A stretch of DNA of 64,000 nt from Asterias rubens. Taxonomy: Eukaryota. The DNA lies in the NCBI RefSeq assembly GCF_902459465.1, contig NC_047074.1, forward strand, positions 620,001 to 684,000. The letters are read 5' to 3'. Position 1 is the stretch's first letter. Each line of letters begins with the position of its first letter. This document shows positions 43,613 through 50,826 of this stretch, piece by piece. The position numbers and the translations under genes are program-made. A model generated the notes under the pieces. That model searched no databases. It was not told where the DNA came from and worked only from the letters and a program-made list of their open reading frames with translations.

Positions 43613-46015
43613 ATGGGGCTCTCCGCAGCGCTAGCCCGTACAGCTCTCGTTACGATACTGGTCTGTGTCTGTTTGAGGCCCGGTGTTATAGCACGGCCTC
43701 TGTCTAACTCTTTTTCAGTATCGGCGAGTGAATCCGCTGAGCAACATCAAAGAGCCGACTTTGACTTTGTGGTGAGTAAACCGTTCCTTTCACTGAGGGG
43801 TTTTCAAGAGAGAAGGGAGGAAGTTTCGTACCCAAATATTCCTATCATTGGACAGGGGTGGGGGCGTGCGTATCATGCCCCCCCCCCTCACAAACCTTTG
43901 TCTTAAATCGGAAGTTACAATTGTTTGACACAATGGTGCGATTTCCGTGCGTCTCAGTTTCCAAACCCTCAGTTTCCAAACCCTCAATCTCCAAACCAGA
44001 GTGAATATCCCACACTCTCCATCGATATTATTCTTTAATGTTTTTGGTTTGAACTTCGAATATGAACCACGTAACTTCAATCTCGTCCGAGAAGAAGTAG
44101 GCCTAAGTGAGTTGATTCTGATTTGGAAGAAAAAAATTACCCTTTGGAGGAAAGGAAGTTTCTAAAAGTGCACTACGCTAGTCTTCCTTTGGTTTTGTTT
44201 ATTTTCCAACAATATTAAACAAGCACAGGCTGTCCAGGGAAGGGCAAAAGTAAAAAAAAAAAAAAACTGTCATAAAAAAAGATGTGCACTCCCAGACCTA
44301 GCTCATAAAAATACCCATAGCATAAGACCTAATAATAAAGGTGATGGTACAATTAGGAGAGTCGGTGCTTATGTAATAGTTTTTGTAAAAGTGATTTATA
44401 AATGATGCAGTACATGAAATTTACCAACACATTATTTTTTTTGCAGAAACAACTTCTCCACGAGCGCCATGCAGCCAACCAAGAGAACACCATCAAAGAT
44501 AGAGTTTTCACAAATGTTGACGACGGAGCCTACGTCACAGAAGCAGACTACGGCCATCCAGAGAAGCGTGAATGGGTAACATGGCCATTGGGTGACCATA
44601 GTCAGCAAGACTCGAATGAGAACCATGATCATGACCATGATGGTCATCAATGCCATTGCATGCATACCAAGCCATCTACTGAGAAACCGACGCCTACTAA
44701 AGGGCTTCCATGGGGTCCGGATCCAACACATCCAAGACCACAAACTACGAAACCACTACCATGGGGACCTGACCCAACTGTTCCCAGAGCAAAGACTACG
44801 AAACCGTTTCCATGGGGCCCGGATCCAACACCTTCGAGACCAGCGACTTCAAAGAAGACAACTACCATGGAACCGGAACCCACCACTACCAAACGTCTTA
44901 CAACAACCCGTAGAACAACAACTACCCCGGAACCCACCACTACCAAGCGTCTTACAACAACACGTAGAACAACAACCCCGGAACCCACCACGACCAAGCG
45001 TCTTACAACAACACGTAGAACAACAACCCCGGAACCTACCAAGCGTCTTACAACAACTCGTAAAACAACCCCAGAACCGGAACCCACCACTACCAAACGT
45101 CTTACAACAACCCGTAGAACAACAACCCCGGAACCCACCACGACCAAGCGACTAACAACAACCCGTAGAACAACAACAACCCCGGAACCCACCACGACCA
45201 AGCAACTAACAACAACTCGTAGAACAACAACTGCCCCGGAACCTACAACTACCAAGCGCCTTACAACAACAACATTGGCACCGAGACCCACCACTGCTTT
45301 AATTCCGACAACTCGGCGTCCCTGGATACCTTGGCACCCGGAACCAAGTGATAGTTCCGAGAGCGGATCATGTGAAGATTCAGACAGTAAGATGAGTAAA
45401 GGCAAAGGTAGCCATAGCCATAAGCACAGCCATAACCATAGCGCTAGCCACAACCATAGTCACAACCACTGTAAGGGAAGCAAAAGTAAAGGAGGCAAAA
45501 GCAGTAAAGGAAGTAAAAGTAAAGGAAAGGGAAGTAAGAGTAAAGGAAGCAAGAGCAAGGCTTCGGGAAGCATGAGTAAAGGAAAGGGAAGTAAGAGTAA
45601 AGGAAAAGGAAGTAAAAGTAAAGGAAGTAAGAGCAAGGCTTCGGGAAGCATGAGTAAAGGAAAGGGAAGTAAAAGTAAAGGAAAGGGAAGTAAAAGTAAA
45701 GGAAGTAAGAGCAAGGCTTCGGGAAGCATGAGCAAAGGAAAGGGAAGTAAAAGTAAAGGAAAGGGAAGTAAAAGTAAAGGAAGTAAGAGCAAGGCTTCGG
45801 GAAGCATGAGCAAAGGAAAGGGAAGTAAGAGTAAAGGAAAAGGAAGTAAAAGTAAGGGAAAGGGAAGTAAAAGTAAAGGAAAAGGAAGTAAGAGTAAAGG
45901 AAAAGGAAGTAAGAGTAAAGGAAAAGGAAAAAAGAGCAAAGGAGGGAAAGGCAAACGTGATGTTCGTGATTTAATTTTCCCGCCTGTTTGGCGTCCAGTT
46001 GCCCTACCAGAGTGA
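43613..46015 (+). CDS. Unrecognised secreted low-complexity precursor A (575 aa): signal, pro, KR, His/Cys segment, PWGPDPT x3, Thr-rich repeats, His-rich segment, KGKGSKS polycation, KR, C-peptide
   Basis: Exon 1 43613-43771 (159 nt, GTG|gtgagt), exon 2 44447-46015 (ttttttttgcag|AAA), phase 0, single open frame of 1728 nt; hydrophobic leader MGLSAALARTALVTILVCVCLRPGVIA; AATAAA at about 46230. Confidence 0.88.
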
Positions 46016-46341
46016 AACGGTTTCAATCTCCGAAATTGTTGCAAAGAATGTTAAAATAATGTTAATGATTTCTTGTAAGCACGGACATTATCTAATCTAT
46101 GGAACAGAATTTACTCTTGAATTTCTTGGTATACAGTAGGTGTAACTTAAAGTTAAGTACTCTCCATTCTTTTTAGTAGAGAAGTTTTGTTCTAACCAAT
46201 TTGATCAAAATGATTGTTTTTAATCATGAAATAAAAATCAATGTTTGGATGACAGTATACCTTATCATTATTTTAACCACAGATGATTTACAAGCTACAA
46301 GTCAAATTTAAATGTTTTACTAAAGACTGCAATTATTACTG

Positions 46342-50200: not shown

Positions 50201-50826
50201 CGCCTAGTAATGGAGGTGGAGGTGGGGGAGGTGGAGGGGGTGGGGGCGGTGGGGGTGGAGGAGGTGGAGGGGGAGGTGGAGGTGGGGGAGGTGGTGGAGG
50301 CGGCGGCAACAAACCTCAGAAACCAAAGCCCAAACCTCCTAGCAATGGAGGTGGGGGAGGTGGTGGGGGAGGTGGAGGTGGAGGGGGAGGTGGAGGTGGA
50401 GGGGGTGGAGGAGGTGGTGGGGGAGGTGGAGGGGGCGGAGGAGGTGGAGGCGGAGGTAACAAACCTCAGAAACCAAACAAACCCAAGCCTAACAAGCCCA
50501 AACCTAACAAACCAAAGCCAAACAAACCAAAGCCGAACAAACCAAAGCCGAACAAACCAAAGCCGAACAAACCAAAGCCTAACAAACCGAAACCATGGTA
50601 TCCAAATTCCAGTTCTGGTAGTGGTAGTAATAGCAATGGAGGTGGTTGGCAAAGTGGTTGGCACAGTAAGGAAAGTGGGGGTAAGAGCTGGGGAAGTAAG
50701 AGCCACGGTAAAGGAAGTCATGGCTGGAAGAGCAAATACCACTCTCATGGCAAGGGTCCAAGACACGGGAGGAGTGCTGAAATGTCTATGCCAGCCGTCT
50801 GGCACCAAGTGGCTTTACCAGCTTAA
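47230..50826 (+). CDS. Unrecognised secreted low-complexity precursor B (about 651 aa): signal, pro, R, Trp-rich start, 8 poly-Gly blocks with NKPKP spacers, Cys cluster, Trp/His/Lys tail, R, C-peptide
   Basis: Exon 1 47230-47388 (159 nt, ACG|gtaagc), exon 2 49030-50826 (tgatttcag|AAG; a NAGNAG alternative lies 3 nt downstream), phase 0, 1956 nt; leader MGRLAPLARQALTTALVVIVCLNHGVLT; AATAAA at about 51493. Confidence 0.88.

What the first reader, a model, noticed from the sequence alone, without database searches (positions are those of the whole stretch)
45959..50826. Conserved C-terminal peptide P-x-V-W-x-x-V-A-L-P under apparent purifying selection
A ends KR|DVRDLIFPPVWRPVALPE* (45959-46015) and B ends R|SAEMSMPAVWHQVALPA* (50773-50826). 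Across the motif the DNA is ccg-cct-gtt-tgg-cgt-cca-gtt-gcc-cta-cca versus cca-gcc-gtc-tgg-cac-caa-gtg-gct-tta-cca: five of the six conserved non-Trp residues use different synonymous codons, so the amino acids are being maintained rather than recently copied. Inference: a cleavable sorting, solubility or assembly-trigger peptide for highly cationic or aggregation-prone cargo, or a released bioactive peptide.
Basis: partly seen in the sequence, partly recalled or inferred. Interest (0 to 1): 0.75.

Follow-up and report, generated by a model that had tools for sequence, protein, structure and literature searches.

The report
Conserved tail on two starfish repeat proteins
Two neighbouring sea-star genes for secreted, highly charged, floppy repeat proteins have swapped almost their entire middle. 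They have kept the same short tail at the very end, preceded by a protease-type cut site, so the tail is a selected functional tag whose job is still unknown.

Summary
PPVWRPVALP (45980-46009) and PAVWHQVALP (50791-50820) each end one residue before a stop. They are the only two P.VW..VALP hits in six frames. Five of the six conserved non-Trp codons differ synonymously.

They end two tandem two-exon paralogues: A (575 aa) and B (651 aa). Exon 1 is also homologous (34.6 bits), with divergence saturated (exon 1 dS about 1.1; tail pS 0.84, pN 0.14). This is old paralogy with protein-level constraint, not a recent copy.

A's splice and its tail-plus-3'UTR are seen in RNA-like contigs. B's splice is inferred.

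I add three points:
- The conserved module also includes an R-x-x-R site (RDVR|, RHGR|), made of almost the only arginines in the last 180 residues.
- The predicted mature N-terminus RPL matches a Surf4 ER-export tripeptide.
- An R-x-W-x-x-W island is shared.

No relatives turned up beyond a contig about 3% diverged. There was no Pfam, PDB or literature match, so conservation in other genera could not be tested.

Best reading: a detachable C-terminal docking, sorting or assembly handle on polycationic disordered secreted proteins. Cleavage, secretion and function are inferred. The scan noted this locus before (s1-175462, s1-175539, s1-175556).

The parts
43613..43771 (+). Gene A exon 1 (53 aa): signal peptide, then predicted mature N-terminus RPLSNSF (43694-43714) and the start of an acidic pro-like region. 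Donor is GTGAGT.
   Evidence: Sequence read. Homologous to B exon 1. The splice to 44447 is seen in an RNA-like contig of X8 with 0 differences, and in an X1 contig of a ~3%-diverged relative.
44447..46015 (+). Gene A exon 2 (522 aa plus stop). In order: acidic/His pro-like part, Thr/Pro/Arg mucin-like repeats, an acidic and His-rich segment, a 163-aa Lys/Ser/Gly polycation, R-x-x-R, then the tail.
   Evidence: ORF. Tandem repeats of period 51-54 and 78 nt. Segment charges. An X8 contig covers 45900-46366 unspliced through the stop into the 3'UTR. AlphaFold2 mean pLDDT 37. No Pfam family.
44567..44584 (+). A: the R-E-W-V-T-W island (R-x-W-x-x-W), just after the EKR dibasic site of the pro-like region.
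   Evidence: Its counterpart in B is RHWSKW.
45956..45967 (+). A: R-D-V-R, a minimal furin-type R-x-x-R that overlaps a K-R dibasic pair.
   Evidence: The only arginines in A's last 180 residues are at positions -19, -16 and -7 from the C-terminus.
45980..46009 (+). A: tail motif P-P-V-W-R-P-V-A-L-P, followed by Glu and the stop (46013-46015).
47230..47388 (+). Gene B exon 1 (53 aa): signal peptide, then RPLDNSF (47314-47334) and the start of a pro-like region. Donor is GTAAGC.
   Evidence: Same length and phase as A exon 1. The splice is inferred and not seen in RNA.
49030..50826 (+). Gene B exon 2 (598 aa plus stop). In order: pro-like helical-type part, eight poly-Gly blocks of 26-50 residues alternating with (N/D)KPKP blocks and a central CDCDCC, a Gly/Ser/Lys/His/Trp region, R-x-x-R, then the tail.
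   Evidence: The Gly runs are uninterrupted yet use all four GGN codons (142 GGT, 84 GGA, 49 GGG, 22 GGC), which fixes the reading frame. No Pfam family.
49189..49206 (+). B: the R-H-W-S-K-W island (R-x-W-x-x-W).
50761..50772 (+). B: R-H-G-R, a minimal furin-type R-x-x-R.
   Evidence: These are the only two arginines in B's last 180 residues (positions -21 and -18).
50791..50820 (+). B: tail motif P-A-V-W-H-Q-V-A-L-P, followed by Ala and the stop (50824-50826).

Best explanation
The decapeptide is the core of a C-terminal module of about 20 residues: R-x-x-R, a 4-6 residue hydrophobic linker, P-x-V-W-x-x-V-A-L-P, and one last residue. Two tandem, anciently duplicated two-exon genes of Asterias share it. 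Both encode secreted, strongly cationic, intrinsically disordered repeat proteins. A is a Thr-rich mucin-like block followed by a His block and a Lys/Ser/Gly polycation. B is a poly-Gly/(NKPKP)n block copolymer. The cores have been replaced by unrelated, internally expanding repeats. Only the ends are kept: the signal peptide with an RPL-x-NSF mature N-terminus, an R-x-W-x-x-W island, and the tail module. I read the tail as a short linear docking motif, a handle recognised by a partner that controls where or when these sticky polycations are packed or assembled (a post-Golgi or granule sorting receptor, or an assembly partner). A furin-type convertase at R-x-x-R could detach it, in the manner of a C-terminal propeptide. 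ER exit is probably handled separately by the N-terminal RPL tripeptide. Shown here: the motif, the paralogy, protein-level constraint, and transcription and splicing of A. Inferred: secretion, cleavage, the partner and the role.
For: The motif is exact and unique in the window. Paralogy: exon 1 of A against B scores 34.6 bits, pairwise conditional E 6e-13, with 27 invariant columns out of 54. The two genes have the same 53-codon phase-0 first exon. Constraint: tail pS 0.84 against pN 0.14, and the 7 conserved codons show 5 synonymous and 0 non-synonymous changes. Exon 1 has dS 1.13 and dN 0.43. The flanking 3'UTR, 5' flank and intron align only at background level. Chance of 7 or more identities in 10 is 1.5e-6. 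R-x-x-R sits 4-6 residues upstream of the motif in both proteins and uses almost all the Arg of the last 180 residues. The cargo is polycationic and disordered: net charge +77 and +56, no hydrophobic segment after the signal peptide, AlphaFold2 pLDDT 37 with the tail as the least-bad segment at 51-55. A is expressed and spliced as modelled, and its mRNA runs unspliced through the stop codon, so the tail is the true C-terminus. RPL and RPV are documented Surf4 ER-ESCAPE tripeptides of aggregation-prone disordered matrix proteins (PMC6097701). Precedent for this architecture exists in the myticalins, which have a conserved signal peptide, a hypervariable cationic core, a dibasic site and a conserved C-terminal propeptide (PMC5577615).
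Against: Only two sequences carry the motif. No orthologue outside a ~3%-diverged relative was found, and that relative's tail was not covered. No evidence of cleavage. A's Thr-rich repeats contain 16 further KR/RR pairs, so basic sites alone are weak predictors in this protein. The tail carries net charge of only -1 and cannot neutralise the core as anionic propeptides are proposed to do. B's splice and expression are not demonstrated: only low-depth contigs lie at the start of exon 2. No receptor or partner is known. The tissue of expression is unknown.
Confidence: 0.45

Rival explanations
1. The tail is not cleaved. It stays on the mature protein as an end-piece: a small hydrophobic Pro/Trp sticker that anchors or cross-links the polycation within an extracellular material such as mucus, adhesive, cuticle or skeletal matrix. 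The conserved C-terminal ends of tropoelastin and amelogenin work this way (from general knowledge).
For: Both proteins meet the operational definition of silk-like structural proteins: a signal peptide, no transmembrane segment, and at least 25% Gly in an 80-aa window (A 27.5%, B 83.8%; PMC4944945). Pro-flanked Trp recurs elsewhere in both proteins (LPWGP three times, RPWIPWHP, KPWYP). This suggests Trp/Pro stickers beside Lys. The R-x-x-R could simply be a conserved part of the motif.
Against: In both proteins the last ~180 residues are almost free of Arg except for an R-x-x-R placed just before the motif. That pattern is typical of a processing site. No material, tissue or partner has been identified.
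Confidence: 0.3
2. The tails are released bioactive peptides, DLIFPPVWRPVALPE and SAEMSMPAVWHQVALPA. They would act as signalling or regulatory peptides in the manner of a C-terminal flanking peptide. The repeat cores would be carrier or by-product.
For: Each protein has a signal peptide, a basic processing site directly upstream, a conserved core of 10 residues and a free C-terminus.
Against: There is one copy per precursor of 575-651 aa, and the bulk of each precursor is elaborate, frame-constrained repeat. There is no amidation Gly. The sequences resemble none found in the papers searched. A is expressed at high contig depth, like a structural product. The cores themselves look functional: poly-Gly is kept pure across synonymous codons.
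Confidence: 0.1
3. The similarity is not a selected protein feature. It would be chance, a recent copy or gene conversion, or a nucleotide-level element at the 3' end of the coding sequence.
For: Only two copies exist. Low-complexity proteins often give spurious matches.
Against: The motif DNA is only 20/30 identical, and the differences sit at synonymous positions. This excludes a recent copy or gene conversion, and argues against a nucleotide-level element. Chance is 1.5e-6 before the identical offset from the stop is required. Independent homology of exon 1 shows that the genes are paralogues.
Confidence: 0.03

Closest known systems
Myticalin / modiocalin precursors of mussels (PMC5577615)
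   Same: A lineage-restricted multigene family. The signal peptide and a C-terminal propeptide are conserved, the cationic centre is hypervariable, and a basic convertase site precedes the C-terminal piece.
   Different: No sequence homology. The myticalin core is 23-42 aa, against 450-520 aa of tandem repeats here. The myticalin C-terminal piece is 35-75 aa and strongly anionic, against 15-17 aa, Pro/Trp/Val-rich and net -1 here. Gene structure also differs.
Silk-like structural proteins and repetitive low-complexity-domain matrix proteins (SilkSlider class, PMC4944945; shematrin/KRMP type)
   Same: Secreted, with no transmembrane segment, Gly-rich low-complexity repeats that arise and turn over within lineages, and often Lys-rich basic blocks. 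B has 83.8% Gly in its richest 80-aa window.
   Different: This is an operational class and not a homologous family. No association with any material has been shown for A or B. The conserved P-x-V-W-x-x-V-A-L-P end has no counterpart that I could find.
Surf4 / ER-ESCAPE cargo such as DSPP, DMP1, osteopontin and amelogenin (PMC6097701)
   Same: Disordered, aggregation-prone secreted proteins whose first three mature residues are x-Pro-hydrophobic. RPL itself is listed for reptile DMP1 and fish osteopontin, and RPV works experimentally. Both A and B are predicted to start with RPL.
   Different: This concerns the N-terminus and not the tail. The signal-peptidase site is predicted by eye (the -3/-1 rule), and echinoderm Surf4 binding is untested.
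Sea star footprint protein Sfp12a/b/c of Asterias rubens (PMC9382459)
   Same: Described as partial, repetitive, Thr-rich and predicted to be heavily O-glycosylated, with no annotated domain. It is expressed in both tube-foot adhesive cell types. A's 222-residue Thr/Pro/Arg block fits that description.
   Different: The sequences (OP067648-OP067650) were not available to any tool here. The authors placed Sfp12 with low identity on unplaced scaffolds, whereas this locus appears to lie on a large piece. Identity is therefore untested, and this is a lead only.

Membership tests
Silk-like structural protein (SilkSlider operational class, PMC4944945) | N-terminal signal peptide | tested here: met
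   By inspection only. There is a basic n-region (Arg9), a hydrophobic core of 12-13 residues, and small residues at -1 and -3 (VIA|RPL in A, VLT|RPL in B). The top Kyte-Doolittle 19-mer lies at residues 1-22. SignalP was not available.
Silk-like structural protein (SilkSlider operational class, PMC4944945) | No transmembrane domain after the signal peptide | tested here: met
   The best Kyte-Doolittle 19-residue window beyond residue 40 scores 0.01 in A and 0.13 in B.
Silk-like structural protein (SilkSlider operational class, PMC4944945) | At least 25% Gly in an 80-residue window | tested here: met
   A 27.5%, B 83.8%.
Neuropeptide / prohormone precursor | Signal peptide plus a peptide bounded by basic convertase sites | tested here: met
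   KR and RDVR precede the A tail, and RHGR precedes the B tail. The other boundary is the protein's end.
Neuropeptide / prohormone precursor | Compact precursor made mostly of peptide copies and spacers; an amidation Gly is common | tested here: not met
   Precursors of 575 and 651 aa, each dominated by one 450-520 aa repeat core. One tail copy each. No C-terminal Gly.
Neuropeptide / prohormone precursor | Mature peptide detected, or conserved across species | not testable with these tools
   No peptidomics data. No orthologue tail was retrievable.
Cationic antimicrobial-peptide precursor with conserved signal and C-terminal propeptide (myticalin type) | Conserved signal peptide, hypervariable cationic centre, basic cleavage site | tested here: met
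   The centre is 10-20 times longer than in myticalins.
Cationic antimicrobial-peptide precursor with conserved signal and C-terminal propeptide (myticalin type) | Anionic C-terminal extension of tens of residues | tested here: not met
   The tails are 15-18 aa with net charge -1.
Surf4 ER-ESCAPE cargo (PMC6097701) | Mature N-terminal tripeptide x-Pro-hydrophobic with no acidic residue at positions 1 or 3 | tested here: met
   RPL in both proteins, if signal peptidase cuts where predicted. Binding was not tested.
GPI-anchored protein | C-terminal hydrophobic signal of about 15-20 residues after a small omega site | tested here: not met
   The last 18 residues have mean Kyte-Doolittle 0.14-0.16 and contain Arg, Asp, Glu and several Pro.
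Any Pfam or PDB family | A significant profile or sequence match | tested here: not met
   Pfam gave 0 families at E<=1 for both exons of both genes. PDB phmmer of the A tail gave 0 hits at E<=10.
Sfp12 of Asterias rubens footprints (PMC9382459) | Sequence identity to OP067648-OP067650 | not testable with these tools
   Only the verbal description was available. No supplement text is held.

The most novel reading that the evidence does not exclude
R-x-x-R followed by P-x-V-W-x-x-V-A-L-P-x-COOH is a portable C-terminal address tag. A dedicated lumenal receptor would read it to route extremely cationic, disordered material-forming proteins into a specific secretory granule of sea stars, for example adhesive, mucous or juxtaligamental-type granules. 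The tag would then be clipped off to release the cargo for assembly. Together with the N-terminal RPL ER-exit tripeptide, this would give a two-ended trafficking code for sticky polymers. Further family members with other cores would then be expected in echinoderm genomes.
Probability: 0.12. Interest if true: 0.7.

Novelty: new variant of a known kind. Interest (0 to 1): 0.4.

Why it matters
Secreted low-complexity polymers such as adhesives, mucus and skeletal or cuticular matrix are hard to annotate and nearly invisible to tryptic proteomics. Neither gene turned up in any of the protein searches run here. The pair shows very clearly which few residues selection protects while the rest of the protein is rebuilt. 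Those residues are two ends and one Trp island, and they are concrete handles for experiments on how cells traffic and deploy extreme polycations without clogging the secretory pathway. The cores, a poly-Gly/(NKPKP)n block copolymer and a 163-residue Lys/Ser/Gly polycation behind a mucin-like block, also interest biomaterials research. If the tail proves to be a sorting or assembly signal, it could be reused as a tag. With only two copies in one genus and no functional data, it remains a modest, well-defined lead.

Tried and rejected
Searches that came back empty:
- Word-indexed protein searches, all blank: A exon 2 residues 1-110, A exon 2 first 151 aa, B last 100 aa scored on residues 25-100.
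- Exhaustive profile search of 1.84 billion representatives with the A+B exon-1 alignment. The only true hit was P0001, an ORF read through exon 1 into the intron on a 759-nt ENA contig. The other four hits are unrelated repeat proteins. Its cluster mate P0006 lies on a 1014-nt contig. No DNA was served for either.
- Exact look-up of the 37-aa C-terminal fragment of A: not on record.
- JGI metagenome scan with the exon-1 patterns: 94 pattern matches, none confirmed.
- Pfam and PDB: nothing. ESM Atlas with the 20-aa tail gave a best score of 0.57, far below the 0.9 lead level, so it was ignored.
- Full-text search for the peptide strings: 0 papers.

Readings rejected:
- GPI signal, because the tail is not hydrophobic.
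- Charge-neutralising propeptide, because the net charge is only -1.
- Recent copy, gene conversion or a nucleotide-level element, because the differences are synonymous.
- SH3- or PDZ-type readings were not pursued, because the protein is lumenal or extracellular.

Not done:
- The relative's A tail had almost no depth.
- A degenerate DNA pattern for the tail against metagenomes was considered and dropped. Roughly 100 chance hits were expected in a collection that had already lacked exon 1.
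Full report
**1. Observation**

The two C-termini read exactly as reported. A ends ...GKGKR-DVRDLIFPPVWRPVALPE-stop (45959-46015). B ends ...PRHGR-SAEMSMPAVWHQVALPA-stop (50773-50826).

A six-frame regex scan of all 64 kb finds P.VW..VALP only at 45980-46009 and 50791-50820. Looser patterns (VW..VA, W..VALP) also hit only these two places.

Seven of ten residues are identical. Of the six identical non-Trp residues, five use different synonymous codons.

Nei-Gojobori counting gives pS 0.84 and pN 0.14 for the ten codons. 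The seven conserved codons carry five synonymous and no non-synonymous differences.

Composition-matched random 10-mers reach 7 of 10 identities with P = 1.5e-6. That figure does not yet require that both motifs end one residue before the stop.

**2. What the two reading frames are**

Each long ORF is the second exon of a two-exon gene.

- Gene A: exon 1 is 43613-43771 (53 codons, donor GTGAGT). Exon 2 is 44447-46015 (pyrimidine tract then CAG acceptor, phase 0). The product is 575 aa.
- Gene B: exon 1 is 47230-47388 (53 codons, donor GTAAGC). Exon 2 is 49030-50826. The product is 651 aa.

The first exons are homologous. They share 27 invariant columns out of 54. phmmer gives 34.6 bits, with pairwise conditional E 6e-13 and E about 1e-3 even at a 1.84-billion-sequence search space.

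Exon 1 has dS 1.13 and dN 0.43. The 5' flanks, intron starts and 3'UTRs align only at background level. The genes are therefore old tandem paralogues, not a recent duplicate.

Earlier scan notes name the genome as Asterias rubens. I did not verify the species myself.

**3. Transcription**

I laid Logan contigs of four runs on 43550-49549.

In run X8, which is identical to the window, one 700-nt contig (depth 243) joins 43550-43770 directly to 44446-44899. That confirms A's exon 1-exon 2 junction. Intron depth there is 0-2.4, against exon depths of 240-1380, so the run behaves as RNA. A second X8 contig (472 nt, depth 214) runs from 45900 through the tail and the stop to 46366 without a splice. 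The tail is therefore the real C-terminus of the message.

Run X1 is an RNA-type run of a relative about 3% diverged, and X31 is that relative's DNA. X1 holds a contig of depth 61 that covers exon 1 and continues 131 nt into exon 2, which is the same splice.

Of 23 well-supported differences between that relative and the window inside gene A, 12 are synonymous and 11 non-synonymous. There is also an in-frame 24-nt insertion in the His-rich segment. The protein is evolving fast but stays in frame.

The tail itself had almost no depth in the relative's runs, so it says nothing about tail conservation.

For B, only low-depth contigs touch the start of exon 2, and no junction was listed. B's splice is inferred from homology with A.

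B's reading frame is nevertheless secure. Its eight Gly runs of 26-50 residues are uninterrupted while using all four GGN codons (142 GGT, 84 GGA, 49 GGG, 22 GGC).

**4. Anatomy of the proteins**

Both begin with a typical signal peptide. By the -3/-1 rule, the cut falls before a shared RPL(S/D)NSF.

*Gene A.* An acidic, His-rich pro-like part (net -10) ends near an EKR dibasic site. Then follow, in order:
- three PWGPDP units;
- about eight Thr/Pro/Arg mucin-like repeats (222 aa, 87 Thr, net +28);
- an acidic and His-rich segment;
- a 163-aa Lys/Ser/Gly polycation (61 Lys, net +62, no acidic residue);
- the tail.

*Gene B.* A mixed-charge pro-like part comes first. Then follow, in order:
- poly-Gly blocks alternating with (N/D)KPKP blocks (462 aa, 281 Gly, 59 Lys) around a central CDCDCC;
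- a 59-aa Gly/Ser/Lys/His/Trp region;
- the tail.

The mature proteins carry net charge of about +77 and +56. There is no hydrophobic segment after the signal peptide. No Pfam family matches. AlphaFold2 on A exon 2 gives mean pLDDT 37 with no secondary structure. Its least-bad stretch is the tail, at 51-55.

**5. What is conserved besides the decapeptide**

Three further features are shared.

(a) *An R-x-x-R site.* Anchoring the alignment on the motif shows RDVR|DLIF-PPVWRPVALP-E in A and RHGR|SAEMSM-PAVWHQVALP-A in B. In the last 180 residues, A has Arg only at positions -19, -16 and -7. B has Arg only at -21 and -18. In each protein two of these very few arginines form a minimal furin-type R-x-x-R, 4-6 residues before the motif. 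The module is thus about 20 residues long.

(b) *The RPL start.* The predicted mature N-terminus RPL fits the Surf4 ER-ESCAPE tripeptide. Pro at position 2 is required, acidic residues at positions 1 or 3 are harmful, RPV was shown to work, and RPL occurs naturally in DMP1 and osteopontin. This signal is used by disordered, aggregation-prone secreted proteins (PMC6097701).

(c) *A Trp island.* REWVTW in A and RHWSKW in B follow the pro-like region. From general knowledge, W-x-x-W is the C-mannosylation consensus. This was not tested.

Everything between these islands is unalignable.

**6. Search for relatives**

All searches were blank.

- Three word-indexed protein searches found nothing.
- The exhaustive exon-1 profile search returned only P0001. 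This is an ORF through exon 1 and the intron on a short ENA contig of the ~3% relative. Its cluster mate P0006 is similar. DNA was served for neither. Both carry Ile where the window has the Phe of RPLSNSF, as does run X1.
- The metagenome scan, PDB, the Atlas (best score 0.57) and the full-text peptide search gave nothing.

Neither gene appeared in any protein database searched.

A-B synonymous divergence is at least 1. The A orthologue pair shows only 12 synonymous differences listed over more than 1 kb. The duplication is therefore far older than that species split, so the family should exist in other forcipulatid sea stars. This is a prediction and has not been checked.

**7. Mechanism**

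The architecture is conserved ends, a replaced cationic centre, and a basic site before a conserved C-terminal piece.

This is the pattern of myticalin-type precursors (PMC5577615). More loosely, it is also the pattern of secreted repeat proteins of biological materials (PMC4944945). Both A and B meet the operational criteria of that second class.

I therefore read the tail as a short linear docking motif on a disordered polycation. A partner would read it during post-Golgi sorting, storage or assembly, and cleavage at R-x-x-R could detach it (confidence 0.45).

Rivals:
- A retained end-piece or sticker in the extracellular material (0.3). Pro-flanked Trp recurs in both proteins.
- A released bioactive peptide (0.1). 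The size and evident function of the cores weaken this reading, as does the lack of amidation.
- Chance, recent copy or a nucleotide-level element (0.03). contradict this.

It is not a GPI signal, and it is too weakly charged to neutralise the core.

A's Thr-rich block matches the verbal description of the partial footprint protein Sfp12 of A. rubens tube feet (PMC9382459). The sequences could not be compared, so this is only a lead to the tissue.

**8. Verdict**

This is a real, selected C-terminal module on a previously unlisted pair of secreted low-complexity proteins. It is a new variant of a known kind: a lineage-restricted secreted family with conserved ends and a turned-over core. Function, cleavage and taxonomic breadth are untested.

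Noticed in passing
window 46342-46728: A very high-copy interspersed repeat lies between genes A and B. Contig depth reaches 10^5-10^7 in all four runs, with hundreds of rearranged joints. It also seems to mark the end of A's assembled 3'UTR.
   Followed up: no
window 46693-48149: In the RNA-like run X8 there is contiguous low-depth coverage (about 14) from just after the repeat, through B's 5' flank and exon 1, and into the first part of B's intron. The rest of the intron has none. This may be read-through from gene A, an unspliced B transcript or another transcript. B's true 5' end is therefore unsettled.
   Followed up: partly
window 45444: The ~3%-diverged relative carries an in-frame 24-nt insertion (8 codons) in A's His-rich segment, in both its RNA and DNA runs. 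This is repeat-length variation that keeps the frame.
   Followed up: no
window 43712: The Phe of the conserved RPLSNSF is Ile in the relative (X1, X31) and in both ENA-derived ORFs P0001 and P0006. That position of the N-terminal island is therefore not strictly fixed.
   Followed up: partly
window 33722-36579 (+): Exons of an ABC transporter lie upstream. The ORF at 36187-36579 matches PF00664 ABC_membrane (E 3e-12). The ORF at 33722-34225 reads like the end of a nucleotide-binding domain followed by an acidic linker.
   Followed up: partly
window 63195-63542 (-): An ORF begins [19 protein letters not shown]..., which from memory looks like the first exon of a clathrin-adaptor sigma (small) subunit. 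Not tested.
   Followed up: no
window 3829-4491 (+): A 220-aa ORF looks like the C-terminal part of a non-LTR retrotransposon reverse transcriptase. It has no Pfam hit at E<=0.001.
   Followed up: partly
window 44708-44842, 45330-45345 and 50594-50602: Pro-flanked Trp recurs outside the tail: LPWGPDP three times and RPWIPWHP in A, and KPWYP in B. This may be a general Trp/Pro sticker theme of the family, of which the tail's V-W-x-P/Q would be one instance.
   Followed up: no
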